This document shows positions 21,473 to 58,423 of a DNA stretch of 64,000 nucleotides, in pieces. Position numbers and translations under genes: made by a program. The notes below the pieces were generated by a model. That model made no database searches. It saw nothing but the letters and a program-made list of their open reading frames with translations, and was not told where the DNA came from. Each line of letters starts with the position of its first letter. The first letter of the stretch is position 1. Source of the stretch: Mobula hypostoma (Eukaryota); contig NC_086104.1 in the NCBI RefSeq assembly GCF_963921235.1, positions 95,728,001 to 95,792,000 of the forward strand, given 5' to 3'.

Positions 21473-23003
21473 CAGGTTTCCCCGCCATCCGAAGGTAGAG
21501 CGTTCCTACGAAACGGTTCGTAAGCCGGAATGTCGTAAAGCGAAGAAGCAATTACCATTTATTTATACGGGAAAATTTTGTGAGCGTTCGCAAACCCAAA
21601 AATAACCTACCAAATCATGCCAGATAACACGTAAAATCTAAAATAACAGTAACATATAGTAAAAGCAGGAATGATATGATAAATACACAGCTTATATAAA
21701 GTAGAAACACTTTTCCACAATCATCGCCTGAACTGTTCTCCGTAGTGAAAATCTCACACAAGCGCCATCGGCAAAAACACACACAAGCGCTCTCCAGTAA
21801 CCTTTAAGCTATGAAGCTGCCAAGTCATACCAAATAACAGGTAAAAATACACAGCCGATATAAAGTAGAAATAATGTGTGTACTGTGTAGTATCACTTAC
21901 CGGAATTGGGAAAGCACGGAGCACACTGATGATGGTGTGTTAGACTGAATCATCAGAGTTTGGGTGGTGCAGTGGCCCCCACCCTCCAGGCCGCTGAGTG
22001 ATACATTGCCGCGAAGCATGCAGTGGTCCAGCGGTAGCCGGGAGGCACACAGCACATCTTTAAGAAAAAAGCCGAAATAAACATGCTAATTAATTAGGTG
22101 CCGCCTGACACGTAATTGGCAGCCCAGATCAGTGATGATTGCTGATTGCGTCGCCTCTGATCTCAGCCGACAATTACGTGTCGGGTGCCACCTAATTAAT
22201 TAGCATATTTATTTCAGCTTTTTTCTTAAAGATGTGCTGTGTGCCTCCCGGCTACTGCTGCATTCTCTGCGAATTGATATCTGTCCGCGGCCTGGGTGTT
22301 AGGGTGGTGGGACACTGGGGTGTCATCTCATCGTTGTCTGTTTCCATTAGAGCAGGCAGCTCATCTTCTATGACTGCCCGTCTCGATGTCGAAGATCGAG
22401 GTTCGTCGTCTGCTGTGGCTGATGTGGAAGGCTTGCTTGACTGCTGAGCCTCGCACATTTTTATATCATACGGTTCTTTGTAAGCACTCAAACCATCCTG
22501 CAAATATCCCCTAAACCGATGTACTCTTTCAAAATTAAAGTCGTACTTTATCATTACCTATTCAGTTTCGATTGTTATCCTTTCCTCTTCCAATTGCATC
22601 AGCTCTTCATCTATCAGCTCTTGGTCATGGGATGCCAAAACCTCTTCAACATCATCTTTGTCAACTTCCACAAGCCAAACTCACTTCGTCCTTACTTCAT
22701 TCACCACGATTGGAGCGCTTAATTATGTCTAGTTTTACGCTAAGTGTAACACCCTTACGAGCTCTTTTAGGCTTTTCTGATACCATAGAACTCATCTTGC
22801 AAACGGCTGCTCACAGGCTCGTGTTTAAGCAATGCCGGGGAGAATGCCGTTTCGAATTTGGGGGAGAGCGGCTGCTCGGGGCGCGCGGCGCACTGCCTTT
22901 TTCATAACTGAAAACACCTTCTGTTAGCGAAAACGGTACTAATGTAGGACTTTCGTAACAGTGAGTTTCGTAAAGTGAACGTTCGAAAAGCGGGGGACAC
23001 GTG
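21473..23003 (-). mobile_element. Internally deleted pogo/Tigger DNA transposon
   Basis: Imperfect TIRs (TA|CAGGTTTCCCCGC... and ...GCGGGGGACACGTG). Minus strand encodes an N-terminal RARKGVTLSVKLDIIKR joined to C-terminal VEVDKDDVEEVLASHDQELIDEELMQLEEE and DFNFERVHRFRGYLQDGLSAYKE, homologous to the ORF at 46103-47773. Confidence 0.82.
21970..22317. mobile_element. Palindromic hAT-type MITE nested in the Tigger element
   Basis: CAGTGG...CACTG-type ends; near-complete internal inverted repeat; same family as 35774-36079. Confidence 0.75.
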
Positions 23004-39000: not shown

Positions 39001-40548
39001 TTTGCCTTCAAGCTCATACTGCCTTGATTCCTCTGCCATCGTTCCACATTAAACCAAACTGTTGACAGTCCAGCTTCCATTTTTGGGTCCAAGGTTAGCA
39101 GAGTGTGAACATGAAAGTTGGAGGTAAAACTTTCCTGCACACCCTTCTCAACCTTTCTGTTGCCATTTACTGCTGGCCTTCACCACCACTTTTCCAGTCC
39201 AGGGGTACTGCTTTAAGTTCCCTCTGTTTTCTCATCTACAAGTCACCCCTTTGGAGATGCTTTTCAAATACATAGGCACTCTTAAATGCCTCTTCACTCC
39301 CTTGGATGGAAATAGTTGAGATCTGATAGATGCACAGAAATTTCCCACAATTAGAAATGGGTGCGGGGGGGGGGGTATTGAAACCTTTTGTCACAGATTG
39401 CTTCTTGGGCTCCACTTCAAATAAATTTGAACCAGGGCAGGAAGTTTGTGATTGCTGTCTCCCACGATCAACATTGTGGGATAACCATATACTGCTGCTG
39501 TTGCTTTTCTGTAAGGGTTATGAATGTGTTTATAATACTGTAAATCTGCTGCCCTTGGGTGGCGATGTTAAAGGCTGTGACTGCACATTCTTTATATCTA
39601 AAACAAGCCACTGGACTAGAAAATAAGATGACATTTGGTTAATGTTGTTTATTAAGTCAGAGGCAGTATATAATGCAATGCTAATGAGATAGTGCCACTA
39701 ATTATAGTATGTGGTATACTGAGCAGTTCTGTGGTATTTATCACACTAATTAGTTCTGCTGTTCGGTTACATTCTTCTGTCATAACTGTAGAATGAGCAC
39801 TTGCATATGGACACATTTTAAATCTTGGCGAATACTTTTCTTCCCCTCTTCCTCCAATCATTCTCTCACTAATCTCATTAAATAATAGAATCCAGAAATG
39901 TTTTGAAGGCACTGCAGTACTGTTGAAGTGTAGCAGCAGAATTAAGATCCCACTGACAGCGCAGATTACCAGCTAATCTGCTCTATTGATTATGGTTGAG
40001 GAAATCGCCCTGCTCTTCTCTGAATTGGTGCACTGGGACATTATGCTCACCAGAGGGCAGATGGGGTTTCCATCTGATCTCCTGCAAAAGAAAATACTTC
40101 TGATGGTCCCGCAGTGCTTCACAGGATTGTCAGCCTATATTACACGCTAAAGGTTTGAGCCAAGACCCTTCATCTGCCCTGATGAGGGGTCTCAGCCTGA
40201 AATGTTGACTGTTTATTCTTCTGCGTGGTGCTCTGGATATACAGCATCTGCAAAATCTCATGTGTTTATGTACTGAAGTCCCTGAAATGGACTTTCAATC
40301 TGGCTTCTGCGGACATTTGGTTTTGTAGCTTGCTGCTCTAGCAATGGGAAGATCTGGAATATTGGCCTTGTTTTTAAAGTCATGGTTGATTACTGTGAAG
40401 GATGTGAAGGCCTGTTACTGAAACCATTCATGGGCTAGGCCAGATGTTAATCAGTTGTTGCTTCAAATTGTAGCCTGATAATTTTGTTCAGTTCGTTTCT
40501 TCTGTTGCTCAGTAAATGAATTAACCACTAGGGCTCTTGCATTTTCAG

Positions 40549-40740
40549 GTGGAACTCTCAATGGAAGATATAGAAACTATTCTAAATACGTTGATATATG
40601 ATGGGAAAGTAGAGATGACGATTATAGCTGCAAAAGAAGGCACGGTTGGTAGCGTGGATGGACAAATGAAGCTGTATAAAGCAGTCAATCCCATCATCCA
40701 GCCCACTGGCCTGATGAGGACGCCTTGTGGGATGTGCCCA
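40549..40740 (+). CDS. POLR3F: POLR3F coding exon 8
   Basis: TTTTCAG|VELSMEDIETILNTLIYDGKVEMTIIAAKEGTVGSVDGQMKLYKAVNPIIQPTGLMRTPCGMCP|GTAAGT; 192 nt. Confidence 0.98.
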
Positions 40741-42278
40741 GTAAGTGTGGCTTCTTTGGGATCAGTGAAGTATTGTTTCATTTATATTCATGGGACATTC
40801 ATTACTCAATCTCACGGGAGAAATGATTGAAGTTGAAGAGGACAGTTTTTAAATCAATATTGGTCATGACACCAGGATGCTTCTGCCAATTTATGTAACC
40901 ACTAAAGTGGTTTAGGTAAATACTTGAGAGTATAATGTGAACATAGCCTAAAGGATTTCTGTGATTGATGGATTTCAGGAAATTATTCCCCTTCCCCTCC
41001 CCTTGCCAGTTTTGGTTCTCTGCATTTGGGTTTATTTTGGTGTTTGTGTACAACGTACTGTGATTTAATTCAATGGGTTGAACCCATCTTCGCCTTTCTC
41101 TGGCAGCAATTTTGGCCCTACATTTGGGTGTAAACATTCAAACTTCCTGAACCATTCTTCCACTTAATTTGAGTGTTTGTAGCTCTGTCAGCACCGTAAA
41201 ACCATACACCAATGTCTGGCAGCATTCAGTGCCATTGCATTGCCTTGTTTCAAAGAGGTCTATGAATAACATCTGTTTAGGACTCTAGGCTCCTAGACTT
41301 AGCAAAGGAATAAAGAGATTGCTGACAGAAGGCTGTCATGTCCACCTTCAGAGATTGCAAGATAGGCTCTGAGCTTGGATAACCCTACAGCTTCCTGTTC
41401 CTGTTACTTCCTACTGGTTCGGTAGATAATAAGGTTGAAGAATGAATGGACTGGGAGGGTGAGTAGGGTATTTGGTCATTACTGCACTTTTTGCAGTTTG
41501 TCTTTTGCCCTGTAAGTGGGAATAGTCTCAAACTCTATAAACACATTTAGGACAACAGCAAGTGGTACCTTTGACGGGGTGGGGGGGGGGGGATATACAA
41601 GGAACTTTGACGAAGAGTAATTAGAAAAAAACTGCTACTACACTCAAGGCTCAAGGTGACTGAAAGCTTGGAGGAGTGGAGATGGATGCCAAGGTTGTGG
41701 GTCTTCCAGACTGAAAGCACTGCTGTTAGTATTGAAGCTAAAGCATTTGTTGCTGTTCAGAGAGCTCATGGAGACCCTCAGTTTGTAATTACCCCATTCC
41801 CTATGTAGTTGATCACTTCCGATAAGTGGTGACATTCTGTCTAAATTATCCCTCAGCCTACCTCCATTATCTTACTCTCAGAAGGAGGCTAAGGCACTGA
41901 AAATCTGCAGGAGTCCTCCACCTCAAATAGTGAGGTCAGAATTTATTGCTCTGTATTTAAATTTTGTTTACAGCAGGAAGAAATATGTGCAAATGGTAAT
42001 TCCCAAAATACATTGCCGGAATTTTGCAAATGTCATCTCACTAGATCCACTTCCTTCCTATTTACCCAGAAAGATGTAAATATTTTACAAGTAAATCTGT
42101 TCGGCACTGCAAAAGTTGTGCATAACCTGTAAAGATGCCGAGTAAACCGTTATGAAGCTGGGGTCCCCTTCAAAATGACTCTGACCCCTCTGGTGATCTG
42201 TTGCTTCTACATATCGGTATATTCTCTCTCTTATTCAGTTTCAGACAGGAGCTCAGTTCCTCTTAATGTTTCTTCCAG

Positions 42279-42356
42279 GTATTTGACGATTGTCATGAAG
42301 GCGGGGACATCTCTCCTGCGACTTGTCTATACATGACAGAGTGGCTGGAATTTTAA
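42279..42356 (+). CDS. POLR3F: POLR3F coding exon 9 (last); completes the 4-Cys Fe-S motif
   Basis: TTCTTCCAG|VFDDCHEGGDISPATCLYMTEWLEF*. Summed CDS is 945 nt = 314 aa + stop. Confidence 0.97.
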   Translation, partial: VFDDCHEGGDISPATCLYMTEWLEF

Positions 42357-45700: not shown

Positions 45701-46102
45701 GTATTTCATTGTACTGCTGTTGTAAAGTTAGCACATTTCGCAACATAAGCTGGTGATATTAAACCTGATTCTGATAACTTCAGCGAGAATGGATGCATTA
45801 ATTACAATCTTTCAGCAATCCTTAGATTCTGAAGAGATACACTATATTGTTCTTCAAAACCCATCCATAAAGTGAACTCTTTTCTTCCCCCCACTGAATC
45901 CCAAGTTATAAGTGGGTGCGTTCTACAGGATTTTTTTCTCAGCAGAAGTAATAGCAACACACAAATATAGGCAGACATTTTTAAATACATAGTAAATAGA
46001 GGTAAGATAATTTAAGAATATTACTTGCAATAAATGATAGTGGTGCACAAAAACACAAGTACTAACCAGAGACGTTGTGGAGTGTTGCGTGGTGGAACAG
46101 AG

Positions 46103-47773
46103 TTAGGGAGAGGGAGGCTCTGATTTTAAGACAAGGAACGCATCAAGAGTTGATTGTTGTTTGCGACGTACTTTTTCCTTGTACATTTCCCTGTAACAGC
46201 TCATAGCGTCTTGCAGTAAGCGGCCAACCCTTAGACTACGTTCTCGGTTTGGGTCGTTCACACTAAGGATATGCACAACCTGATCAATGTACGATAAGGC
46301 ATCCGAAAGATGGTTTGTCATTATTTGAAGAGGAGCTGGTGGTGTTTCTATCATATCAATTTCTTGTGAAGCCTGCTCTTGCTCCAACAACATGAGATCT
46401 TCATCTGACAAATAATCTTCATACGAATCCAAGAGGTGAATCACATCTCCTTCGACAACATCTTCAAATCCGGCCTCATTTGCTAGTTCTACTATGTCTC
46501 TGGTAACCTTTTCTGCTGATTCTGCTGGTGGAAAGCCACTAAAGTTGTTGATGCACTCCGGCCAAATGTTTTTCCAGGCACCATTCATTGTAGAAACTTT
46601 CACTTCATCCCATGACTCAGCTATGTTATCTATTGCATTCATAATGTTAAAGCTTTTCCAAAATTCTCGAACTGTTGGCTTACCTTCTTCATCAGTTGCA
46701 TAAGTCAATTGCTTAAAAGTTTTTCTTAAATAATATCTTTTGAAAGTTGCAATTACACCTTGATCCATTGGTTGTAATAAGGCTGCTGTGTTGAGGGACA
46801 AGTACTCAACTCGCACATTATTAGAAAGATCATTTAAATTCAGTGGGTGGCTAGGAGTGTTATCCAAAATGAGCAGTGCTTTGTTGGAAAGATGATGTTT
46901 GGCACAGTACTTTTCTACAGCTGGACAGAAATAGTTGATAAACCAGTCATGAAAAATAGTCACAGTCATCCAGGCTTTGCTGTTTGAGTGCCAAATCACT
47001 GGTAGGTTAGGTTTTGCATAACCCTTGAGAGCTCTGGGATTCTCACAGCTGTACACTAGAAGGGGCTTTAACTTAAAATCACCAGCAGCATTGCCTCCTA
47101 CGAGTAGCGTCAGGCGATCATTGGAAGCTTTAAAGCCCGGGATGGCCTTCTCTTCTTTTGAAATATATGTTCTGTCAGGCATGCGTTTCCAGAAAAGACC
47201 CATTTCGCCTACATTAAATACCTGTTCTGGCATGTAAGCTCCTTCATCAATTACCTTCTTCAGTTCACTCGGATAATTTATTGCAGTACTGGCAACAGCA
47301 TTATGCACTTTATGCAAGTTGAATCGCTTTTGAAACATGTCAAACCACCCTTTACTTGCCAAGAAAGGTTTTCCTTGTGCACCGCTGCCCTCTTCTTTCA
47401 AAAGTTCATCATAGAGGCTCTTGGCCTTAGCTTGAATAACATTTGTACTTAATGGCACATTATCCTGCGTCTGGTCTTTTATCCACATGCTCAGGAGTCT
47501 TTCCATATTAAGCATCACTTTGCTATGGTGAAAGTAGAGTGTTTGAGCGTTTAATGGTGCAGCAATTTGAACACTTGTCTTAATTTCATCTCTGCTGTCT
47601 CTTATCGTTGCCACTTCAGATGTGGCTAGCCCCAAAGTTTTAGCAATTGTACTAAGTTTTTCTCCGGCATCAAACCTTCGTAAAATATCGAGTTCTATAT
47701 CCAGTGAAATTGCTTTACGTGGTTGTTTAGGTTTACAACTTGCACTTGAACTTGTTAGCCTTTTTCCGGACAT
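46103..47773 (-). CDS. Tigger/pogo transposase-derived protein (TIGD1-like; CENP-B HTH + DDE_1), 556 aa from MSGKRL
   Basis: Uninterrupted ORF: RKAISLDIELDILRRFDAGE, FLASKGWFDMFQKRF, VFNVGEMGLFWKRMP, LILDNTPSHP, LQPMDQGVIATFK. Polypyrimidine-TAGCAG acceptor at 47812-47817, just upstream of the ATG. Confidence 0.88.
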   Translation of the reverse strand: MSGKRLTSSSASCKPKQPRKAISLDIELDILRRFDAGEKLSTIAKTLGLATSEVATIRDSRDEIKTSVQIAAPLNAQTLYFHHSKVMLNMERLLSMWIKDQTQDNVPLSTNVIQAKAKSLYDELLKEEGSGAQGKPFLASKGWFDMFQKRFNLHKVHNAVASTAINYPSELKKVIDEGAYMPEQVFNVGEMGLFWKRMPDRTYISKEEKAIPGFKASNDRLTLLVGGNAAGDFKLKPLLVYSCENPRALKGYAKPNLPVIWHSNSKAWMTVTIFHDWFINYFCPAVEKYCAKHHLSNKALLILDNTPSHPLNLNDLSNNVRVEYLSLNTAALLQPMDQGVIATFKRYYLRKTFKQLTYATDEEGKPTVREFWKSFNIMNAIDNIAESWDEVKVSTMNGAWKNIWPECINNFSGFPPAESAEKVTRDIVELANEAGFEDVVEGDVIHLLDSYEDYLSDEDLMLLEQEQASQEIDMIETPPAPLQIMTNHLSDALSYIDQVVHILSVNDPNRERSLRVGRLLQDAMSCYREMYKEKVRRKQQSTLDAFLVLKSEPPSP

Positions 47774-48399
47774 CTTGAGGGTAAATAAAATGAGAAAGTC
47801 TTGAAAATAAACTGCTAGGAGAAAAAAAACTAAACCTGTTGTACTAACTGAATTCAACTGAAATCGCCACGTTTTCTGCACATGCATCAAGAAACATGAA
47901 CTGAATTTCTGAAAGAATTTGTCACTTTTTCATAATGTTGTGCCTATTTATTTACATAAGAGTGATTTTTTTTATTCTGTACCTCGGATTATTTGGTAGT
48001 GATTTGTGAATTCAGCAAGGGCAAGTTTCTGCTACCCAAACTGCGGTAATGGCAGGTTCATTATATCAAAGGATTGGAAGACTGTAAAAATTATAACATG
48101 ATTCAAAAAGGATGGAATATAAAAGGTGGTGATTTCAGGCCAGTTAACTTGATGTTAGAAAAGCACTGGCATCAATTATTATGGAAATTATAACAATAAC
48201 ATTAGGAAGATCAAAAGATTCAAAAAGGGAAGTTATTGACATTGGTTTGTAGAGTAATGAACGATGGACTGATGGAACTGCTTTGCTTGGAAGTGGCATA
48301 GACTCAGCTCGGCAGGAATGTCTCCTCCTGTATTGTATTAAGTGGTAACCTGAGCAAACATGGCTTCATGAATGTGAAATCATGTCTGACAAGTTCATG

Positions 48400-49860
48400 G
48401 AAACTGCAGTGTGGCAGACAGGAAAGCTGTACAAGACTGACCAACACATCGCTAACACCAGCCAACCTGCTACCAAGGAAAGCTGCTGGAAAGAGGCCAG
48501 CAACATAATGAAGGATCCACCCGCCCTGCTCAAGGAACATCCTCCCACCCACTCCCATCGGGGAGGAGGCTACCTAGCATCCATGCCAGGGCCACCAGAC
48601 TCAAAAACAGTTACTTTCCCCAAGCAGCAACACCTCCACCCAGCAACCCACCCCATCACACCTCCCACCAACACTACTTCATCAGTTTCTTTCAGGGCTA
48701 CCCTATGTACAGACACTCCTGTACCTAGTGTCACTTTATGGACATACAATCTGTGTATATAAGCTATCTTATGTGTTTTTATTGTGTTCTTTATCATATT
48801 TAGATTTTTTTTTGCTGCATCGGCTCCTGAGTAACAATTATTTCTTTCTCCTTGACACTTGTGTACTGGAAATGACATTAAAATATCTTGAATCTTGAAG
48901 AAAAATGAGTCCAGAGTGGATCAAAGGGAACCTCGGCTTCTGTACCTTCAAGATATCCTGGATCCTTGACTTTCTCATCGGAAGTCCACAGTCCGTCCAG
49001 GTTGGAAATAATATCTCCTCCATGTTGACAATCAATACAGGCGCACCTGAAGGAAGTGCACTCAGCCCTCTCTTCTACTCTCTCTACAGTTACCACTGCG
49101 TGGTTAGACACAGCTCATACACCATCTATAAATTCGTTGTGACACGACTGCTGTTGGCAGAATCTCAGACGGTGATGAGGTGGTGTACGGGACTGAGGTA
49201 GATCAGCTTGTTGAGTGGTGTCATAACAATAACACTTGCACTCAGCATCAGTAAGACCAAGGTATTGGTTGCGGACTTCACTAAGGGGAAGTTGGGAGAA
49301 CACAGATCAGTCCTCATTGAGGAGTCGGCAGTGGAAAGGGTCAGCAGTTTCAAGTTCCTGGGTTTTAACATCTCTCAGATATATTCTGGGCCCAACATAT
49401 TGATGCATGACAGCAGCTATATTTCATTAGGAGGTTGAAAAAGTTTGGTACATCACCAAAGACTAATAGATTTCTAGAGATGCACTGCGGAGAGGATGCT
49501 ATTTGCAGCACCGTCTGGTATGGAGTTGCCAAAGCACAGGATTGGAAAGAGCTGCAGGGCATTGTAAACTCAGTAATTCCATCGTGGGCATACGCCACTC
49601 CACAACCGAGGATATCCTCAAAACGCGGTGCCTTAAGGAGATGGCATCCATCATCATTAAAGGTTCTCACCATCAAGGACAGTCCCTCTTCTCATTCATT
49701 GCTGCCTTCATGGGTGAGGTACAGGAGCCCGAAGGAACATTCAATAATGTTTCAGGATCAGCTTCCTCCCTTCTGCCATCAGATTTCTGAATGGACCAGA
49801 AACACTACCTCACTTTTTGCACTATTTAAAACATATCTTTCTTGTTGTAACATAGTAGTT
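48400..49860 (+). mobile_element. Rex1-like LINE fragments (two adjacent pieces)
   Basis: WILDFLIGSPQSVQVG..NTGAPEGSALSPLFYSLY; SKTKVLVADF..SSFKFLG; TCTTGAATCTTGAA tail near 48890. Confidence 0.75.
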
Positions 49861-49867
49861 TTTATAT

Positions 49868-50835
49868 GACCATAAGACATAGGAACAGAATCGAGACACC
49901 TGACCCATTGGGTCTGCTCTGCCATTTCATCATGGCTGACTCATTTCCCTCTCAACTCCAATCTACTCTCTTCTCCCTGTAACCTTCTGTGTCCTGACTA
50001 ATCAGAAACCTATCAACCTCTGCCTTACATGCACTCAGTGACCTGGCCTCCACAGATTCACCGACCTCTGGCTGAAATAATTCTTCCTCATCTCTGTTCT
50101 AAATGGATGTCCCTCTGTTTTGAGGCTATGCCCTCCTAGACTCCCGCACCATATGAAACATCCTCTTCACATCCACTCTATCTAGTCCTTTTGAGAGGTT
50201 TCAATGAGATCTCCCCACATTTTTCTGAATTTCAGCAAGTACAGGCCCAGAGCCTTAAATCGCTGCTCATAAGATAACCCTTTCATTTCCGGAATCATTC
50301 TCGTGAATCTTTGAACCGTCTCCAAAACCAGCACATCCTTTCTTAGATAAGGGGCCCAAAACTGCTCACAATAGTCCAAGTGAGGCCCCACCAGTGCCTT
50401 ATACAGCCTCAGCATCACCTTCTTACTTTTACATTCTAGTCCTCTCGAAACGAATGCTAACACTACATTCACTTTCTTTACCACCAATTCAACCTTTGGG
50501 GAATCCTGCACAAGGGCTTCCAAATCTCTTTGCACCTCAGATTTTTGAATTTTCTCCGTTCAGAAAATAGTCTATGCTTTTATTCCTTCTGACCAAAGTA
50601 CATCACCATACACTTCTGCAAACTCTCTGCTTCCCCAGTACTACCTACCCCTCCACATATCTTTATATTGTCCCCAAACTTGGCCACAAAAACATCAACT
50701 TCATCATAAAATTGTTGACATACAATGTAAAGATTAGCAGTTGCAACACAGACTCCTGTGGAACACCACTTGTCACCAGCAGCCAATCTGAAAAGGATCC
50801 CTTTATTCCCTCTCTTTGCCTCCTGCCAATCAGCC
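49868..50835 (-). mobile_element. CR1 LINE 3' fragment
   Basis: VTSGVPQESVL; LYKALVGPHLDYCEQFWAPYLRKD. Confidence 0.85.
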
Positions 50836-51123
50836 ACTGCTTTATCCATGCCAGAACTGCACTGTACTCCTGCTGTAAAACAAATTTCATGTCATATGTC
50901 AGTGGTAATAAGCCTGATTCTGATTCAGTACGTGCAACATAACTGGAGTTTCTAAAGATGTTCATATAAGGTGCCATATAAAAGATTACTTTTCAAGATA
51001 CAAGCTCGAGGGATCCGAGGTACGATGTTAGCATGGAGAGAGGACTGGCTATCTGGCTGAAAGCAGTATATGGGAATAAGGGGGCTAATTTATAGTACTT
51101 CTCAAACTGTAGCTGTTGAAATA

Positions 51124-51830
51124 CACTCAGTGGCTACTTTATCAGGTACGCCTGCTTGTTAATGCAAATATATAAACAGCCAATCAGGTAGCAGCAACTC
51201 AATGCATTAAAGCATGCAGACACGGTCAGGAGGTTCAGTTGTTGTTCAGGCCAAACTTCAGCATGGGGAAGAAATCTGATCTAAGTGACTTTGACCGTGG
51301 AGTGATTGTTGATGCCAGACAGGGTTGTTTGAGCATCTCCAAAACTCCTGGGGCTTTTTACTCACAAGTCTCTGGAGTTTACAGAGAATGGTGTGAAAAC
51401 CAAAAAAACATCCAGCGAGCGGCAGTTTTGTGGATGAAAATGCCTTCATGAGAGCTCAGAGGAGAATGGCCAGACTGGTTCAAGCTGACAGAAAGGTGAC
51501 AGTAACTCAAATAAGCACATGCTACAACAGCGGTATACAGAAGAGCATCTCTGAACGTGCAACATGTTGAACCTTGATGTGGATGAGCTACAGAAGCAGA
51601 AGAGCATGCAGTGTTCCACTCCTGTCAGCTAAGAGCAGGGAACTGAGACTGTAGCAGGCTCAGGCTCAGGCTCATCAAAACCTGACAGCTGAAGACTGGA
51701 ACAACATTGCCTGGTCTGACAAATCTTGATTTCTGCTGCGACATGCCACAAAGAACTCAGGCTGTTCTGGGGCAAAGGTGGGTCCCACCCAGTACTGGAA
51801 AGGTGTACCCAATGAAGGGGCCACTGAGTG
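51124..51830 (+). mobile_element. Tc1-like non-autonomous element (same family as 32834-33361)
   Basis: TA|CACTCAGTGGC...GCCACTGAGTG|TA; MGKKSDLSDFDRGVIVDARQ. Confidence 0.87.
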
Positions 51831-51957
51831 TATACTGATGATTTAAAGGAAGTGCATACACTGTAGACCAATATCTGGATTATAAGAAGTAGTGAGAAAG
51901 CAAATTGTGATGATTATAAACAATTTACACAGAGAAATATGCAAATTAAATCTGTGG

Positions 51958-52250
51958 AGACCACGGCAGCACAGCAGTTAGCACGACATCATAGCAGTTC
52001 GGGTGTTCCAGAGTTCAATTCCAGCGCCGTCTGTCAGGAGTTTGTACGTTCTCCCTGGGAACCACTCGGGTTTCCTCCGAGTGCTCTGGTTTTTTCCCCA
52101 GAGTCCAAGGACATACCTGTTAGCAGGTTAGTTGGTGATTGTAAATTGCCCTGTGATCAGGCTAGTCGGGGGTCGCTGGACGTTGTGGCTCTTTGGGCCG
52201 GAAGAGCCTGTTCTGTGCTGTCTCTCTAAACAAAAAACAAACAAAAAAAA
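51958..52250 (+). mobile_element. tRNA-derived V-SINE (HE1-like)
   Basis: tRNA-like head with GAGTTCAATTCC, V-domain, CR1-like tail and A-rich end. Confidence 0.75.
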
Positions 52251-53029
52251 AATGTAGGGTTACTAATTTAGGAAGAAAGAGCAATAAAACCATATTACAC
52301 GTGTGTTTCGGCCTTTTGGGTAACAGAATTTCACCTTTTACAGAATTCATGAATAACTACACAAAATTTTGAGATGCAGTATAAAATTCGCTCTTCAGAG
52401 TTCAGATAAAAATAGTAAATTAATTTTTAACTCACATTTCCTGACGCAGGTGACACAGCTTTGCATGACGAAATATGGGCCATTCTTAGGATCCCCTGCC
52501 AGAACATGGGGGTCACCTGTATTTGAAAAGAAGATCGGCTACAGCACAAACAGGTCTGGGGTACTCAAATACCTGAGACAGAGAAAGCTGCAGCATAGGC
52601 ACAGCCAGGTAATCAGGAAGGTGAACACAATGCTGGCTATTATTTCAGGAGAGTTCAAATATAAAAGTAGTGAGTCTCACAAGAACTTCACAAGGGACTA
52701 CAAGACCTCACCTTGAGTACTGTGTACAGGTTGGCACCCTATTCAAGAGGGGTATACCATCATTTGAAGCATTCAGGAGATGGTTTCATGGATAGAGGGA
52801 CTGTCTTAGGAGGGAAAGTTGGACAGGTTGGGTTTGTACTTAATGGCATTTATAAGAACGAGAGGTATTCTTACTGAAACTCGTAAGGTTCTTAGGGAGA
52901 TATATAAAGTAAAACATGGGATTAGATAGTACAATGCCTGGCTTAGCAAGCACCTATTCAATATAGCGATTAGAATGAATTTCTCTGGTGAGTTTTGATT
53001 CTTTGTCTTTGAAAACTCTGGACCAAAGA

Positions 53030-53452
53030 ATTCCTAATGAACATTGATTTCTCTGTCTTCTGATAATTTCTCCCCCCTCCACCTTCTCTCTCTTTTTCAA
53101 TTCCCCATTACAGCTCCCCGCCCCCCCCTTACCCATTCTCTTCTCCTCACCTGCCTCTGATGCCCCTCCTCCTTCCCTTTCTCCCGTGGTCCACTCTCTT
53201 CTCCTATCAGGTTCCTTCTTCTTCAGCCTTTTCCACCTATCACCACCCAGCTTCTCCCTCATCTGACTTCATCTATCACCTGTCAGCTTGTGCTCCTTCC
53301 TCTCCCCCCACCTCCATATTTTAGCTTCTCCTCCCTTCATTTCTCATCCCGACTATTTTTTCCCTTCTATAGGTGCTGCCTGACCTGCCGAGCTCCTGCA
53401 GTATTGTGTGCGTTGCTCTGGATTTCCAGCAGCTGCAGAATCTCCTGTGTTT
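53030..53452 (+). mobile_element. Penelope-like terminal fragment
   Basis: ATGAACATTGATTTCTC, pyrimidine tract, GCTGCCTGACCTGC motif. Confidence 0.6.
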
Positions 53453-54131
53453 ATTCCATATGGTCTCCCCCTGTTGCTATTTGTTATGGGAATAGGAATA
53501 GGCAACTGAGCTCAGCATCTTGTCCTTTCATCTTCGAACACTGGGAAAAGGGGACAAGGGTTCCTGGAAACTGGGTCCAGTGCACTCTGTTATCATCTGG
53601 AATGCCTCAGCATCTGCACTTTCAAACAAGCACCAAATTCTGCTTTCCTCCTAGTTACCAGTGTTCTCTCTCTCAGATGCTTCATTCAAATCCTGAGCCT
53701 CAATCCCCTGAGGTAACAAACACCAGATTCTGCTGGAAGATTATTAACGTAATGAAAGATGCACTTTGGTCTTCCAATAGGAGATGTCTGTCAGTGAAAA
53801 CTGCTGATTTGCGCTGCTGCACTACAAACGGTGGTGGTAGTGTGTTCGGCCCAGTACATCATGGCTAAAGCCCTCTCAACTCCTGAGCTCATCTACATGA
53901 TGTGCTGTTGTAGGAAAGCAGCATGCATCATCAGAGATCCCTATCACCCAGGCCATGCTCTCTTCTCATGCCTGCCAACAGGTTGAAGGTACAAGAGCCT
54001 CAGGACCCACATCACCAGGTTCAAGAACAGTTACTGCCCCTCAACCATCAGGCTCCTGAACAAAAGGGGATAACTACACTCACTTGCCCATCCATTGAGA
54101 CGTTCCCACAACCAATGACCTCACTTTACAG

Positions 54132-54322
54132 CAAACAACAGGAATTCTGCAGATGCTGGAAATTCAAGCAACACACATAAAAGTTGCTGGTGAACGCAGC
54201 AGGCCAGGCAGCATCTCTAGGAAGAGGTCCTGACGAAGGGTCTCGGCCTGAAACGTCGACTGCACCTCTTCCTAGAGATGCTGCCTGGCCTGCTGCGTTC
54301 ACCAGCAACTTTTATGTGTGTT
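54132..54322 (+). mobile_element. 191-bp Penelope-derived mini-insertion: perfect 59-bp hairpin with a hammerhead motif in the loop
   Basis: 14-bp TSD ACCTCACTTTACAG (54118-54131 / 54323-54336). Arms 54170-54228 and 54264-54322 are exact reverse complements. Confidence 0.88.
54227..54260 (+). ncRNA. Minimal type-I hammerhead ribozyme motif
   Basis: GTC-CTGACGA(54230-54236)-AGG GTCTCGG CCT-GAAA(54250-54253)-CGTC^GAC; predicted cleavage after C54257. Confidence 0.72.
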
Positions 54323-54922
54323 ACCTCACTTTACAGACTCAGTATCTCATTGTCATGTTCTCGTTTTTTATTGCTACTTATTTATATTTGCATTTGTAGT
54401 TTGGTGTCTTCTACACTGATCTTTCAATGATCCTGTTATAGTTACTATTCTATAGATTTGCTAAGTATGCCTGCAGGAAACATCTTGGTGAACGTCTTCT
54501 GCACCCTCTCCAAAGCCTCCATGCCCTTCCTTGTAATGAGGCAACCACAACTGCACACAGTACTCCAAATGTTGAATCAAACATCAGCCTATGTTTGATA
54601 CAGCTCCATCATGACCGGACAACTGTTACATTCAACTGCCCAACCCACGAATGCAAGTATGCCGTAGGCTTTGCCACTCTATCTACCTATGCTATCATTT
54701 TCAGGGGGTGCATAAGTTACGGACACCTGTTCATACCAATGAGTTCTCATAAATACAGTATTAATAAAGTAAGAACTAGTCTTGAAAAAAATGTTTACAT
54801 GTGACTTGTCAACAACAATCAGATACCATTGTTTCCTAAGAATAGAGGCACCGTTTTCAATACAGAATCAACTTAACAGAGCTACTCCAGAAAATGACAT
54901 ACAATAATCTCTAATGATACTT

Positions 54923-56506
54923 ACATAGAATAGTACAGCACATTACAGGCCCTTCGGCCCACAATGTTGTGCCGACTCTCAAACCCTGCCTCCCATATGA
55001 CCCCCCACCTTAAATTCCTCCATATACCTGACTAGTAGTCTCTTAAACTGCACTAGTGTATCTGCCTCCACCACTGACTCAGGCAGTGCATTCCACGCAC
55101 CAACCACTCTCTGAGTAAAAAACCTTCCTCTAATATCCCCCTTGAACTTCCCACCCCTTACCTTAAAGCCATGTCCTCTTGTATTGAGCAGTGGTGCCCT
55201 GGGGAAGAGGTGCTGGCTATCCACTCTATCTATTCCTCTTATTATCTTGTACACCTCTATCATGTCTCCTCTCATCCTCCTTCTCTCCAAAGAGTAAAGC
55301 CCTAGCTCCCTTAATCTCTGATCATAATCCATACTCTCTAAACCAGGCAGCATCCTGGTAAATCTCCTCTGTAACCTTTCCAATGCTTCCACATCCTTCC
55401 TATAGCGAGGTGACCAGAACTGGACACAGTACTCCAAGTGTGGCCTAACCAGAGTTTTATAGAGCTGCATCATTACATTGCGACTCTTAAACTCCATCCC
55501 TCGACTTATGAAAGCTAACACCCCATAAGCTTTCTTAACTACCCTATCTACCTGTGAGGCAACTTTCAGGGATCTGCGGACATGTACCCCGAGATCCCTC
55601 TGCTCCTCCACACTACCAAGTATCCTGCCATTTACTTTGTATTCTGCCTTGGAGTTTGTCCTTCCAAAGTGTACCACCTCACACTTCTCCGGGTTGAACT
55701 CCATCTGCCACTTCTCAGTCCACTCCTGCATCCTATCAATGTCTCTCTGCAATCTTCGACAATCCTGTACACTATCTACAACACCACCAACGTTTGTGTC
55801 GTCTGCCAACTTGCCAACCCACCCCTCTACCCCAACATCCAGGTCGTTAATAAAAATCACGAAAAGTAGAGGTCCCAGAACAGATCCTTGTGGGACACCT
55901 CTAGTCACAATCCTCCAATCTGAATGTACTCCCTCCACCACCACCCTCTGCCTTCTGCAGGCAAGCCAATTCTGAATCCACCTGGCCAAACTTCCCTGGA
56001 TCCCATGCCTTCTGACTTTCTGAATAAGCCTACCATGTGGAACCTTGTCAAATGCCTTACTAAAATCCATATAGATCACATCCACTGCACTACCCTCATC
56101 TATATGCCTGGTCACCTTCTCAAAGAACTCTATCAGGCTTGTTAGACACAATCTGCCCTTCACAAAGCCATGCTGACTGTCCCTGATCAGACCATGATTC
56201 TCTAACTGCCCATAGATCCTATCTCTAAGAATCTTTTCCAACAGCTTTCCCACCACAGACGTAAGGCTCAACGGTCTATAATTACCCGGACTATCCCTAC
56301 TACCTTTTTTGAACAAGGGGACAACATTCGCCTCCCTCCAATCCTCTGGTACCATTCCTGTGGACAACGAGGACATAAAGATCCTAGCCAGAGGCTCAGC
56401 AATCTCTTCCCTCACCTCATGGAGCAGCCTGGGGACTATTCCGTCAGGCCCCGGGGACTTATCCGTCCTAATGTATTTTAACAACTCCAACACCTCCTCT
56501 CCCTTA
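54923..56506 (-). mobile_element. Young 5'-truncated CR1 LINE with an uninterrupted RT ORF
   Basis: ORF 54979-56574 (the N-terminal residues come from flanking DNA): KSPGPDG, YMDFSKAFDKVPH, GVPQGSVLGP, LADD. 6-bp TSD ATACTT (54917-54922 / 56507-56512). Confidence 0.93.
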
Positions 56507-57789
56507 ATACTTGTGCAATGATACTCCACTAAATCAGACCAGTGTAAACCCTCTCCAAAACCAGACCAGTGCAAGCCTCCCCGACAGAGCTGTTTTGGAA
56601 AACGACATGCAATAATCTCTAATGATATTTGTGCAATGATACTCCACTAAGTGGTGTAACAGTCACTGATACTTCATTGAAACCACTCTTTGTGTGAAAC
56701 GTTCTGATTCTGTAATGTAACCAGGCATGGGAGGACATAAATAACATAAATATCCATGTTAATTGGCCTTCATCAAGATCATTCCCTACGTTACTGAGGA
56801 GATATGGTTATCATATTAATTGGTATTGTGTATTTTGCAACTTAAGAATACAATTTGCTTATGGACACCCCTAAAATCATAACCTGTCCATAACCCGAAG
56901 ATCCTGGTTGTTGGTGTGCACTCCATACATCCCTGAAAGTGGAGAATAGTACAGAAGTGAAAGGATAGTACAGAAGGTGTTTGCCATGCTTGCTTTCCTC
57001 AGTCTGGGCACTGGCTGTAAGAGTTGGGAAGTCACAAGTTGCAGCTGTACAAAACCAGGTAGGCAGCATTTGGACGCCAGATTAACAAGACATGGAGGCT
57101 TTGGAGGCAGAAAGAGTTCACCAGACTTTGTCTGGATTGGAAAGAATTAGCCAGAAGGACAAACTTATGATGTTTTCTTCGGAGTGTCAGAAGCTGAGGG
57201 AATAACCCGTAGAGGCTGCTAAAGTGATAAGAGGCACACATTAGGTAGATAATCAGAATCCTTTTCCCCCAAGATAGAAATGTCAATTACTAGGGAGCAT
57301 GGGCTCATGGTGAGAGGGCGGCAAGTTTAAAGGGGATGCGTTGAGCAAGTTTTTTTTGAACATAGAGTGTGGTAGATATCAGGGGAAGTGGGCACAGCCC
57401 TCTCCACCCATGACATCTATCATTAAGGATTCCTACATCCAGGTTATGCCCTCTTCTAGTTGCCACTGTCAGGCAGGAGGCGGAGAATCCCGAAATTCCA
57501 CACTGCCAGGTTCAGGAACAGCTACTTGACTGCAACCATCAGTTTCCTGAATCGACCCTAACTCAGCAACCCAACACCTCCCGCATTACCGTGGCCTTGT
57601 CTTCAACTCTTTCGCTCTAAGGTCTTATGTAAGTAGGTATATGGCAATAAAATTGGTGGAGAGACCATACTTATGTTGAAGAGGCGTTACAAGTAGGGAA
57701 TGGAAGAATAGAGAGCAGGATGAATTGGCGTCATTAGTGTCGCTGGTCTGAAAGGCCAGATCCCATGAGAACATTGTACATATTTACAC

Positions 57790-58130
57790 AACTACCCTTT
57801 ACCTCAGCGCCGCTCACTCCCTCGCTCCCGTTAACACGAGAGACGCTCCATCACTTTGTCTCCAACACTCCGGCCTCCAGCTTACGTCACGTGATGGGGC
57901 CGAGGCCGACGGGGCGGAAGTGACGGACATCCCGAGGCGGACCCGGCTGCTCGTCGCCTAGCAACCGCGAAGCGCCGGCCTTGGAGGGAAGCAGGCGAAG
58001 TGACAGACAGCCGGGCAGAAGGGCCGGTCGGCGGGGCTTGGTCATCGGTCAGTACTGTACGTCCGCGCCGCCGCCCAGGTTAGCGCTCGGGCCTCGGAGC
58101 TGCCGTTAAAGGTGGGCTGGGGAACAGACT
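57790..58130. promoter_or_regulatory. Second CpG island; probable bidirectional promoter
   Basis: CpG-rich; CRE-like/E-box TTACGTCACGTGA (57882-57894), GC-box/ETS GGGGCGGAAGTG (57911-57922), X-box GTCGCCTAGCAAC (57953-57965). Minus donor GAG|GTAAAG (57803/57802); plus donors near 58047-58112. Confidence 0.8.
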
Positions 58131-58423
58131 AAGAGCTTATTTCTCTGTGACTTTAAACTGACGGGCTTTCAGTCTGGGAAGCTGTGCACTGATAATTAAT
58201 TGTATGTTGCAAATTGCTCCTTGTTTAGGAGGAGGGAATGATGTGATGTCAAACAGTCTCTGACAACCGGCCCTCACCTGTGGCTGAACTACTCAGCCTG
58301 ACGGAACCGTTTCTACTGACGGGAGAAGGGGCAAAGGCGGGTTACCAGTCGCGTCGGGCAGCCGTGGCTGGCAGCTCACCTCGGAGAAGGAAAACGCAGA
58401 TCTCAAACCTCCACTGCCTCGCT

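What the first reader, a model, noticed from the sequence alone, without database searches (positions are those of the whole stretch)
46103..47817. Candidate domesticated, catalytically dead pogo/Tigger transposase gene
Seen: a 556-codon ORF with no stop or frameshift, whereas every other DNA transposon here is broken. There is no matching TIR pair, only faint remnants near 45840-45880 and 48040-48065. The first Asp of the DDD triad is Gly (FNVGEMG; GGC at 47209-47207), while D2 (LDN) and D3 (PMDQG) are kept. The CENP-B-type HTH region is retained. A T-rich tract with a tandem TAG/CAG acceptor lies about 40 nt upstream of the ATG. Known: CENP-B, JRK and TIGD genes are single-coding-exon pogo domestications, often with a damaged triad. 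Inference: a lineage-specific domesticated DNA-binding protein at a position where no such gene is known to me in tetrapods.
Basis: partly seen in the sequence, partly recalled or inferred. Interest (0 to 1): 0.72.

Follow-up and report, generated by a model that had tools for sequence, protein, structure and literature searches.

The report
Ray-specific tamed Tigger transposase gene
This intact 556-codon reading frame is a jumping-gene enzyme (Tigger/pogo transposase) that rays and skates turned into an ordinary host gene, kept beside POLR3F in all four ray orders sampled; it is one more case of a well-known kind, and only stingrays and devil rays have lost a catalytic residue.

Summary
Window 46103-47773 (minus strand) is an uninterrupted 556-codon Tigger-type ORF (Pfam DDE_1 1.8e-44, HTH_Tnp_Tc5 2.3e-13). 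It has no terminal inverted repeats. The first catalytic Asp is Gly (GGC, 47209-47207); D304 and D337 are kept.

The domestication reading is strongly supported:
- Orthologues lie between TSNAXIP1 and POLR3F in Mobula, Hypanus, Pristis and Narcine. In Amblyraja only POLR3F was seen within the flank. These genera cover all four batoid orders.
- Pairwise dN/dS is 0.16-0.22 (bootstrap upper bounds at most 0.26), in every domain and on the Mobula branch.
- The gene tree follows the species tree.
- Skate cDNA contigs show a spliced mRNA: a 5' exon, then a canonical GT-AG intron, then one coding exon.
- The exon 1 donor, the acceptor and a CpG island are conserved in the window. This gives a two-exon gene with a 9.9-kb intron.

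- The "dead" triad is limited to Myliobatiformes. Sawfish, electric ray and skates keep D-D-D.
- The conserved acceptor lies 135 nt upstream of the ATG, not about 40 nt.
- The "faint TIR remnants" score no better than chance.

The batoid clade, which includes a second catalytically dead paralogue family, is separate from mammalian TIGD1/CENPBD1. No close shark protein was found. The gene is auto-annotated as "TIGD1-like" and I found no paper on it. It is a new member of a known kind and of moderate interest.

The parts
46103..47773 (-). Complete coding sequence: 556 codons plus a TAA stop at 46105-46103, all within exon 2. It encodes a Tigger1-like transposase-derived protein.
   Evidence: ORF list, translation, Pfam DDE_1 and HTH_Tnp_Tc5. 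The exact protein is in the public collection as an annotated product (P0269).
47207..47209 (-). Codon 189, GGC = Gly, at the position of the first catalytic Asp (FNVGEMG).
   Evidence: Sequence. The orthologous codon is GAT in Pristis, Narcine and Amblyraja. Gly is shared by two Mobula sequences and Hypanus only. The column is D in 48 of 70 family members.
46862..46864 (-). Codon 304, GAT = second catalytic Asp (LILDN), retained.
46763..46765 (-). Codon 337, GAT = third catalytic Asp (QPMDQG), retained.
47309..47506 (-). HTH_Tnp_Tc5 (CENP-B-type) DNA-binding helix-turn-helix, residues 90-155.
   Evidence: Pfam E=2.3e-13. dN/dS is 0.13-0.27 in this block.
47549..47716 (-). N-terminal psq/CENP-B_N-like helix-turn-helix, roughly residues 20-75. 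It is diverged and fast-evolving on the stingray stem.
   Evidence: CENP-B_N scores only E=0.15. AF2 predicts helices 24-35, 40-47 and 51-59. Foldseek matches CENP-B(1-129), 1HLV, at E=3.3e-3. Nine of the 31 stingray-stem changes fall here.
46574..47119 (-). DDE_1 (RNase-H-like transposase core), residues 219-400 of the Pfam match. Beta strand 1 carrying residue 189 lies just upstream of the match.
   Evidence: Pfam E=1.8e-44. The AF2 model has pLDDT 84.5. Foldseek matches Mos1, SETMAR and Sleeping Beauty catalytic domains. dN/dS is 0.12-0.20.
47774..47908 (-). 5'-UTR part of exon 2. Exon 2 begins after the conserved polypyrimidine tract and the AG at 47910-47909.
   Evidence: Skate cDNAs join exon 1 to the homologous AG (L005:9863). 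The tract and AG are conserved in four orders and in paralogue B.
47909..57802 (-). Intron 1 (about 9.9 kb, GT...AG), filled with repeats that include a LINE reverse-transcriptase ORF. Inferred by homology, not by Mobula RNA.
   Evidence: Donor GT at 57802-57801. Acceptor. RT ORF at 54979-56574. The Hypanus gene spans 10.3 kb.
57803..57882 (-). Inferred non-coding exon 1. It is homologous to the skate cDNA 5' exon. The 5' end is approximate.
   Evidence: Alignment with skate genome and cDNA: the donor GCTGAG|GTAAA is conserved. Unique match in the window. The skate cDNAs start with a template-switch oligo.
57750..58150 (-). CpG-island promoter region with conserved TCACGTGA and CACTTCCG motifs.
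   Evidence: GC 0.67-0.71 and CpG o/e about 1.1, against 0.38 for the whole window. Conserved blocks with Pristis and Amblyraja.
47812..47817 (-). It is present but not conserved, so it could at most be a lineage-specific alternative acceptor.
   Evidence: Sequence. The position is not conserved in Pristis, Narcine or Amblyraja.
48946..49023 (-). Alternative upstream coding exon used by the M. birostris isoform X1 model (MEEILFPTWTDCGL...DILK). It lies in a Mobula-lineage insertion.
   Evidence: Six-frame match. No counterpart in L001, L002 or L005; the only match is at an unrelated place in L003.
40525..42356 (+). Last two coding exons of the neighbour POLR3F (RPC34/RPC6). They lie within the frames 40525-40827 and 42267-42353 and are followed by the stop. 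POLR3F converges tail-to-tail on the gene, about 3.7 kb away.
   Evidence: Pfam RNA_pol_Rpc34 E=6.2e-13 and 9.5e-6. The same neighbour is present in five other batoid assemblies (Narcine shows TSNAXIP1 only).

Best explanation
The ORF is the coding exon of a host gene that arose when a Tigger1-like (pogo superfamily) DNA transposon inserted between TSNAXIP1 and POLR3F. The insertion happened in an ancestor of all living rays and skates.

Shown: the element lost its terminal inverted repeats. In skates its mRNA is spliced from an upstream non-coding exon; the homologous exon in the window lies in a CpG island. The gene has been under purifying selection in every batoid order since.

Inferred: the protein acts as a nuclear, sequence-specific DNA-binding factor. 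It would bind through its two helix-turn-helix motifs. The RNase-H-like core and the acidic, helical C-terminus would serve as a structural or interaction scaffold rather than as a nuclease. In stingrays and devil rays the first metal-binding Asp became Gly, which by general DDE chemistry abolishes cleavage. Selection stayed just as strong afterwards, so the selected function in this lineage cannot require catalysis. Likely targets are leftover Tigger-family ends or MITEs, or other genomic sites, as with CENP-B, the fission-yeast Abp1/Cbh proteins and other TIGD proteins. This target step is speculation.
For: Identity: Pfam DDE_1 and HTH_Tnp_Tc5. The AF2 model (pLDDT 84.5) matches human TIGD1 at E=3.8e-44, then JRKL, TIGD2 and CENP-B, and the Mos1, SETMAR and CENP-B DNA-binding-domain structures.

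Orthology: the gene lies between TSNAXIP1 and POLR3F in Pristis and Hypanus. It lies next to POLR3F in M. birostris and Amblyraja, and next to TSNAXIP1 in Narcine. The window is collinear with the Pristis locus over about 30 kb and carries POLR3F exons.

Selection:
- dN/dS is 0.16-0.22 for all orthologous pairs, with bootstrap 97.5% limits of at most 0.26.
- Every domain is below 1, and the DDE core is at 0.12-0.20.
- The Mobula branch is at 0.158, against 0.155 for the Pristis branch.
- Neutral simulation keeps the ORF open in less than 0.3% of runs at 0.1 substitutions per site or more, whereas the observed dS is 0.4-0.95.
- The CDS is 83% identical to Pristis, against 72-75% for the flanking DNA.

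Phylogeny: the codon tree follows the species tree.

Not a transposon: no TIRs in any copy.

Expression: four skate cDNA contigs begin with a template-switch oligo and are spliced from exon 1 to exon 2 across a 2.36-kb GT-AG intron. The donor, acceptor and CpG island are conserved in the window.

Catalysis: Gly189 is shared by Mobula and Hypanus only. Mobula and Hypanus still differ at only 19 of 556 residues.
Against: - No RNA evidence from Mobula itself was available. The exon 1 to exon 2 model in the window rests on homology and on automatic isoform models.
- DNA binding, nuclear localisation and targets are untested.
- dN/dS after the D189G change could not be measured directly, because Hypanus and M. 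birostris DNA could not be fetched.
- Six basic residues in the HTH region were lost on the stingray stem, and HTH1 has dN/dS of 0.5-0.6 in Mobula pairs. DNA binding in this lineage may therefore be altered or weakened.
- Three orders keep an intact D-D-D triad, so a catalytic role outside stingrays is not excluded.
- Genome-wide copy number was not measured.
Confidence: 0.88

Rival explanations
1. It is a domesticated transposase whose selected function is still catalytic (DNA cleavage or recombination). Skates, sawfish and electric rays retain that function, and the stingray/devil-ray version has shifted to a different, non-catalytic role or is a dominant-negative or regulatory variant.
For: The D-D-D triad, with DD32D spacing, is intact in Pristis, Narcine, Amblyraja and Leucoraja since the batoid radiation. 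The DDE core is among the more constrained regions (dN/dS 0.12-0.20). The stingray stem carries a burst of 31 changes at otherwise invariant positions, including D189G, T191M and six lost basic residues. It also has a long protein branch (0.11) followed by very short ones.
Against: Retention of the triad is also seen in non-catalytic domesticated pogo genes: JRK, JRKL and POGZ are reported with conserved triads (PMC7386202). The sister paralogue B lost D1 and D3 and is also conserved. dN/dS did not change on the Mobula branch. There are no TIR substrates at the locus.
Confidence: 0.15
2. It is an ordinary, not-yet-decayed copy of a Tigger transposon (or a recently immobilised one) that stayed open by chance, and it is not a host gene.
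For: It is Tigger-like along its whole length. Two of the three catalytic residues are intact. A related Tigger remnant lies in the same window. Gao et al. treated TIGD1-like sequences as multi-copy and pseudogene-like (PMC7386202).
Against: The same locus is occupied in four orders. dN/dS is 0.16-0.22. Neutral simulation gives less than 0.3% open frames at 0.1 substitutions per site or more. There are no TIRs. Skate mRNA is spliced from a separate upstream exon; its counterpart in the window lies in a CpG island.
Confidence: 0.02
3. It is the batoid orthologue of the tetrapod TIGD1/CENPBD1 gene, that is, an old vertebrate gene rather than a ray-specific domestication.
For: RefSeq names it 'tigger transposable element-derived protein 1-like'. 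The best Swiss-Prot structural match is human TIGD1 at 39% identity. Identity to mammalian TIGD1/CENPBD1 is 54-57%.
Against: In the tree the batoid A+B clade (100/100) is sister to lobster and octopus Tigger sequences (97/92). The mammalian clade sits outside. Shark TIGD1-like proteins are only 48-50% identical, group with turtle sequences, and lie inside a GTF2I-family gene, not beside POLR3F. CENPBD1 is reported as a mammal-only, recent domestication (PMC7386202).
Confidence: 0.03

Closest known systems
Mammalian TIGD1 / CENPBD1 (Tigger1-derived genes)
   Same: Same transposon family (Tigger within pogo) and the same architecture: two N-terminal HTH motifs, a DDE_1 core and an acidic helical C-terminus. 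Both have a single coding exon of about 540-590 aa and a partly damaged triad (CENPBD1 is reported as DD32G). Sequence identity is 54-57%, and the structure match to human TIGD1 is E=3.8e-44.
   Different: It is an independent origin. The batoid clade is closer to lobster and octopus Tigger sequences than to the mammalian clade. The genomic location differs (TSNAXIP1-POLR3F). The damaged residue is D1 (Gly) and only in stingrays, whereas the mammalian sequences aligned here mostly lack D3.
CENP-B, and fission-yeast Abp1/Cbh1/Cbh2
   Same: They are pogo-derived host proteins that bind DNA through the two N-terminal HTH motifs and keep a non-catalytic DDE-like core. The model's N-terminus matches the CENP-B(1-129)-DNA structure 1HLV. 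S. pombe Cbh2, Cbh1, Abp1 and human CENP-B are structural hits.
   Different: Identity is only 16-19%. No CENP-B dimerisation domain was found. A centromere or retrotransposon-silencing role is untested. The triad is unrecognisable in CENP-B (PMC7386202), whereas here it is nearly intact.
JRK / JRKL / TIGD2 / TIGD7 (other Tigger-derived vertebrate genes)
   Same: They are domesticated Tigger transposases under purifying selection, with reported Ka/Ks of about 0.17-0.21 (PMC7386202). That range matches the 0.16-0.22 found here. Structural matches are E=1e-24 to 1e-29.
   Different: Identity is 21-27%. They are mammalian or tetrapod genes, whereas this one is restricted to batoids among the annotated proteins searched.
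Active Tigger/pogo transposons (for example Tigger1, or Passer among other pogo families)
   Same: The encoded protein is homologous along its whole length. The DD32D spacing is kept in the non-stingray orthologues.
   Different: There are no TIRs or recognisable ends. The position is fixed and orthologous across orders. The host supplies a CpG-island promoter and an intron. The window's copy has Gly at D1.

Membership tests
pogo/Tigger transposase superfamily (protein homology) | DDE_1 (PF03184) RNase-H-like catalytic core | tested here: met
   E=1.8e-44, covering profile positions 2-177 of 177. The fold matches Mos1, SETMAR and Sleeping Beauty catalytic domains.
pogo/Tigger transposase superfamily (protein homology) | CENP-B-type HTH (HTH_Tnp_Tc5, PF03221) | tested here: met
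   E=2.3e-13, residues 90-155.
pogo/Tigger transposase superfamily (protein homology) | N-terminal psq/CENP-B_N HTH (PF04218) | tested here: inconclusive
   E=0.15, 12.1 bits against a cut-off of 21.2. The region aligns with relatives that carry PF04218, and the model matches 1HLV at E=3.3e-3, TM 0.56 by target.
Catalytically competent DDD transposase | All three acidic residues of the D-D-D triad present | tested here: not met
   G189-D304-D337 in the window, M. birostris and Hypanus. D-D-D in Pristis, Narcine, Amblyraja and Leucoraja.
Mobile Tigger element | Terminal inverted repeats flanking the ORF | tested here: not met
   No bracketing inverted repeat. The best flank alignment is reached by 28 of 200 shuffles. 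None in the orthologues or paralogues.
Mobile Tigger element | Multiple near-identical copies in the genome | not testable with these tools
   Only the 64-kb window is available. It holds one full copy plus one distant remnant. Among annotated proteins, each ray genome shows one A-type and one or two B-type proteins.
Domesticated transposase gene | Orthologous copies at the same locus in species that diverged long ago | tested here: met
   The TSNAXIP1-gene-POLR3F neighbourhood is seen across four batoid orders, with both neighbours or one depending on the flank. DNA collinearity with Pristis.
Domesticated transposase gene | Purifying selection between orthologues (dN/dS well below 1) | tested here: met
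   0.16-0.22, with bootstrap upper limits of at most 0.26. All domains and branches are below 1.
Domesticated transposase gene | Transcription as a host mRNA | tested here: met
   Met in skates: spliced, 5'-complete cDNA contigs from several runs. In the window's species this is only inferred from the conserved donor, acceptor and CpG island and from automatic isoform models.
Tetrapod TIGD1/CENPBD1 orthogroup | Monophyly with mammalian TIGD1/CENPBD1, excluding transposon sequences of other phyla | tested here: not met
   The batoid clade is sister to lobster and octopus sequences (97/92), and the mammalian clade is outside.

The most novel reading that the evidence does not exclude
The batoid ancestor captured a Tigger transposase that has remained a catalytically competent, host-serving nuclease or recombinase in skates, sawfish and electric rays, where the D-D-D triad is intact and the DDE core is constrained. 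On this reading, stingrays and devil rays re-purposed it in a burst of change: D189G, T191M, six lost basic residues in the DNA-binding region, and 31 changes at otherwise invariant sites. The result would be a natural before-and-after pair for how a domesticated transposase gives up catalysis.
Probability: 0.15. Interest if true: 0.7.

Novelty: new member of a known kind. Interest (0 to 1): 0.45.

Why it matters
Domestication of pogo/Tigger transposases is well documented in mammals, yeasts and insects. The main survey (PMC7386202) set aside "TIGD1-like" sequences as multi-copy and pseudogene-like, and it reported only pseudogenes of four known pogo-derived genes (JRK, TIGD5, TIGD7, POGZ) in cartilaginous fish.

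This locus shows that at least one such sequence is a real gene. It has been under selection since before the ray and skate orders split, and it has a sister paralogue family. It adds an independent domestication event in a little-studied vertebrate lineage.

It also offers a clean comparison. Three orders have an intact triad and one order has an inactivated triad, all under equal constraint. That makes the question "does the host need the catalysis?" directly testable.

Tried and rejected
- **TIR search.** Three approaches found nothing that brackets the ORF: exact-seed inverted repeats, a Smith-Waterman alignment of the flanks against shuffles, and inverted repeats in four related loci. I also tried to recognise Tigger ends by comparing with the remnant at 22.4-22.8 kb. 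That element belongs to a different family and did not help.
- **Homology boundaries as element ends.** I considered treating the A/B paralogue homology boundaries (window about 47917 to 45895) as the old element ends. The alignments at both ends were too degenerate to say so.
- **First AlphaFold run.** With 17 sequences it gave pLDDT 52.7 and was discarded. A 70-sequence alignment gave pLDDT 84.5.
- **Sequence search of the PDB.** No hit. Only fold search found relatives.
- **Ancestral reconstruction.** I replaced them with a least-squares split of NG86 distances.
- **DNA of close relatives.** Hypanus and M. birostris DNA could not be fetched because the files are too large (one search found no record). 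dN/dS after the Asp-to-Gly change therefore could not be computed.
- **Shark or chimaera POLR3F locus.** It could not be fetched, because no POLR3F protein id was obtainable without typing a spliced sequence. The two shark TIGD1-like proteins I checked lie in a GTF2I-family gene instead.
- **Sequencing runs behind the skate cDNAs.** A literature search found nothing.
Full report
**1. The observation**

The region holds one long frame on the minus strand, 46103-47890. From the ATG at 47773 it runs 556 codons to a TAA at 46105-46103.

Pfam finds DDE_1 (E=1.8e-44, full profile length) and HTH_Tnp_Tc5 (E=2.3e-13). The motif FNVGEMG is present. The second and third catalytic Asp are kept: D304 (GAT, 46864-46862) and D337 (GAT, 46765-46763). 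The spacing is G-D-32-D. In a 70-member family alignment these columns are D in 48, 55 and 40 sequences respectively.

Nothing like a terminal inverted repeat brackets the ORF. The best inverted local alignment of the two flanks is reached by 28 of 200 shuffles. The "faint remnants" are therefore no better than chance.

The window holds no other full copy. The only other match is a distant, internally deleted Tigger-like remnant at 22435-22792.

**2. What it is: orthologues and synteny**

The exact protein is already in the public collection as an annotated product (P0269). Relatives are all auto-named "tigger transposable element-derived protein 1-like":

| Species | Identity to window protein |
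|---|---|
| Mobula birostris | 99% |
| Hypanus sabinus | 97% |
| Pristis pectinata | 87% |
| Narcine bancroftii | 77% |
| Amblyraja radiata, Leucoraja erinacea | 73% |

The window is thus from a devil-ray-like myliobatiform. By inference it is a Mobula species.

The neighbourhood is the same everywhere it could be read:
- Pristis: TSNAXIP1, then the gene, then POLR3F tail-to-tail.
- Hypanus: the same three genes.
- M. birostris and Amblyraja: POLR3F on the 3' side.
- Narcine: TSNAXIP1 on the 5' side.

The window is collinear with the Pristis locus for about 30 kb. It contains the last POLR3F exons on the plus strand at 40525-40827 and 42267-42353 (Pfam RNA_pol_Rpc34). The POLR3F stop is about 3.7 kb from the gene's stop.

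All four batoid orders therefore carry the same insertion. From general knowledge, not tested here, the batoid crown is on the order of 200 million years or more.

**3. Selection**

Nei-Gojobori dN/dS between orthologous copies:

| Pair | dN/dS |
|---|---|
| Mobula-Pristis | 0.158 |
| Mobula-Narcine | 0.202 |
| Mobula-Amblyraja | 0.163 |
| Pristis-Narcine | 0.220 |
| Pristis-Amblyraja | 0.168 |
| Narcine-Amblyraja | 0.188 |

Codon bootstraps give upper 97.5% limits of 0.21-0.26.

These are copies at one fixed locus, so the constraint is host-level. It is not selection on an active transposon lineage.

All domains are constrained: DDE core 0.12-0.20, C-terminus 0.08-0.22, HTH_Tnp_Tc5 0.13-0.27. 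A least-squares split of the distances gives 0.158 for the Mobula branch and 0.155 for the Pristis branch. There was no relaxation after the Asp was lost.

In a neutral simulation the frame stays open in 0.3% of runs at 0.1 substitutions per site, and never at 0.2. The observed dS between orders is 0.4-0.95.

The CDS block is 83% identical to Pristis, while the flanking non-coding DNA is 72-75% identical. The codon tree is ((((Mobula, Pristis), Narcine), Amblyraja), B), which is the accepted order-level phylogeny.

**4. Expression and gene structure**

Public run assemblies hold about 2-kb contigs that encode the skate orthologue. The look-up indexed it in 55 blocks; 24 contigs were read.

Four of the five contigs I examined begin with the template-switch oligo sequence GGTATCAACGCAGAGTACATGGG. 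I recognise this from general knowledge as a SMART cDNA 5' adaptor. They align to the Amblyraja genome in two blocks:
- a 107-nt GC-rich exon at L005:7401-7507;
- then L005:9863 onwards.

The junction is ...GCTGAG|ATACTC..., across a GT...AG intron of about 2.36 kb. This is direct evidence for a spliced, 5'-complete host mRNA in skates.

The acceptor (a polypyrimidine tract plus AG, about 135-138 nt upstream of the ATG) is conserved in Mobula, Pristis, Narcine and Amblyraja, and also in both B paralogues. In the window it is the AG at 47910-47909.

The exon 1 donor is conserved too: GCGCTGAG|GTAAAGG in the window, with GT at 57802-57801. It lies in a CpG island at about 57750-58150, with GC up to 0.71 and CpG o/e of 1.1 against 0.38 for the window. 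The island carries conserved TCACGTGA and CACTTCCG motifs.

The inferred Mobula gene is therefore:
- exon 1, about 57882-57803;
- a 9.9-kb intron full of repeats, including a LINE RT ORF at 54979-56574;
- exon 2 from 47908, containing the whole ORF.

The 10.3-kb span of the Hypanus gene fits this model.

An exon used by the M. birostris X1 isoform model (window 49023-48946) lies in a Mobula-lineage insertion that has no counterpart in the other orders.

**5. The catalytic residue**

Gly189 is shared by both Mobula sequences and Hypanus. Pristis, Narcine, Amblyraja and Leucoraja have Asp (GAT) and a complete D-D-D triad. Domestication therefore came first, and loss of the Asp happened later on the Myliobatiformes stem.

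That stem carries 31 changes at positions that are invariant in the other three orders. They include T191M next to D189G and six lost basic residues in the HTH region: R17Q, K27E, R77Q, R83H, R146M and R148Q. Nine of the 31 lie in the first 75 residues. HTH1 has dN/dS of 0.5-0.6 in Mobula pairs, against 0.25-0.28 for the pairs that include the skate and 0.44 for Pristis-Narcine.

After that stem, change nearly stopped. Mobula and Hypanus differ at 19 of 556 residues, only one of them in HTH1. The protein-tree branches are 0.11 for the stem and 0.003-0.022 for the tips.

I read this as a functional adjustment followed by renewed constraint. A formal branch test needs DNA that I could not fetch.

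**6. Relationship to known genes**

A maximum-likelihood tree puts the POLR3F-linked genes (A) and a second batoid family (B) in one clade (100/100). That clade is sister to lobster and octopus Tigger sequences (97/92). The mammalian TIGD1/CENPBD1 clade lies outside, and shark, turtle, lamprey and hagfish sequences lie further away.

No shark or chimaera protein above 50% identity appeared among the hits. The two shark proteins I checked lie inside a GTF2I-family gene, not beside POLR3F. The domestication is thus batoid-specific as far as annotated proteins show, and it is independent of the mammalian genes.

The AlphaFold model (pLDDT 84.5) has the expected layout: two three-helix bundles, an RNase-H-like beta/alpha core with residue 189 on the first strand (E185-194), D304 at the end of strand E299-304, and long C-terminal helices. 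Its best matches are human TIGD1, JRKL, TIGD2, TIGD7, JRK, CENP-B and the fission-yeast CENP-B homologues. In the PDB it matches Mos1, the CENP-B(1-129)-DNA complex, SETMAR and Sleeping Beauty.

**7. Mechanism**

- **Shown:** it is a transposase-derived host gene, fixed, spliced (in skates) and constrained.
- **Follows from established DDE chemistry:** the stingray protein lacks one of the three metal-binding carboxylates and should not cleave DNA.
- **Inferred:** it works as a DNA-binding protein through its HTH motifs, with the dead core and C-terminal helices as a scaffold, as in CENP-B and other TIGD/JRK proteins. Its targets are unknown. Relic Tigger ends and MITEs are the obvious candidates.

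An alternative I cannot exclude (about 15%) is that the D-D-D orthologues in the other three orders still use catalysis.

**8. Novelty and literature**

Gao et al. 2020 (PMC7386202) list 12 pogo-derived vertebrate genes. They excluded TIGD1-like sequences as multi-copy and pseudogene-like, and in cartilaginous fish they reported only pseudogenes of four of these genes (JRK, TIGD5, TIGD7, POGZ). Their Ka/Ks values for accepted genes (about 0.17-0.21 for the Tigger-derived genes, about 0.09 for CENPB) are in the range found here. Full-text searches found no paper on a ray or skate TIGD1-like gene.

The gene is therefore a new, uncharacterised member of a well-known kind, already auto-annotated in RefSeq.

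I did not test whether it is the B paralogue.

Noticed in passing
L003:10001-11695 (Pristis), L004:10001-11686 and L004:5005-6186 (Amblyraja); proteins P0005, P0006, P0007, P0015: A second batoid family (B) is sister to the POLR3F-linked gene. It has D1 changed to Ala (or Glu) and D3 changed to His (or Glu). It shares the same conserved acceptor about 140 nt upstream of the ATG and has no TIRs. dN/dS between Pristis and Amblyraja is about 0.09. Amblyraja has two copies 4 kb apart, and Pristis has at least two loci. It looks like a second, catalytically dead domesticated gene family.
   Followed up: partly
Scyliorhinus canicula and Carcharodon carcharias loci of P0083 and P0072 (no DNA held): Both sharks carry a 560-aa Tigger-derived ORF nested on the same strand inside a GTF2I-family gene. 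The two proteins are 92% identical and have lost D3 (Thr in Scyliorhinus, Ala in Carcharodon). This is a separate candidate domestication or nested gene.
   Followed up: partly
window 22435-22792 (-): An internally deleted Tigger-like remnant keeps only N- and C-terminal transposase pieces (48% and 44% identity to the gene). It has an in-frame stop and belongs to a different Tigger family.
   Followed up: partly
window 22029-22260: A 104-nt inverted repeat (90% complementary, 24-nt loop) lies just downstream of the Tigger remnant.
   Followed up: no
window 48946-49023 (-): This exon, used by the M. birostris isoform X1 model, adds 26 residues. It lies in a 2.5-kb Mobula-lineage insertion that is absent from the orthologous loci of the other orders. 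It is probably a minor or spurious isoform.
   Followed up: partly
window 54979-56574 (-) and 59139-61827 (-): A LINE-type reverse-transcriptase ORF of 531 aa lies inside the gene's inferred intron 1. Further ORFs lie upstream of the CpG island: one with an RNase H match (59139-60569) and two RT-like ones that I did not scan (60626-61827).
   Followed up: partly
window 57803-57882 (-), L005:7401-7507: Exon 1 carries a short upstream ORF whose start context GTGATGGA is identical in Mobula, Pristis, Amblyraja and the skate cDNA. It may be a conserved uORF.
   Followed up: no
proteins P0008, P0074 (Homarus), P0009, P0010 (Octopus): Lobster and octopus Tigger proteins are 60-61% identical to the ray gene. 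That is closer than any shark or mammalian sequence, and hints at horizontal spread of this Tigger lineage among marine animals.
   Followed up: no
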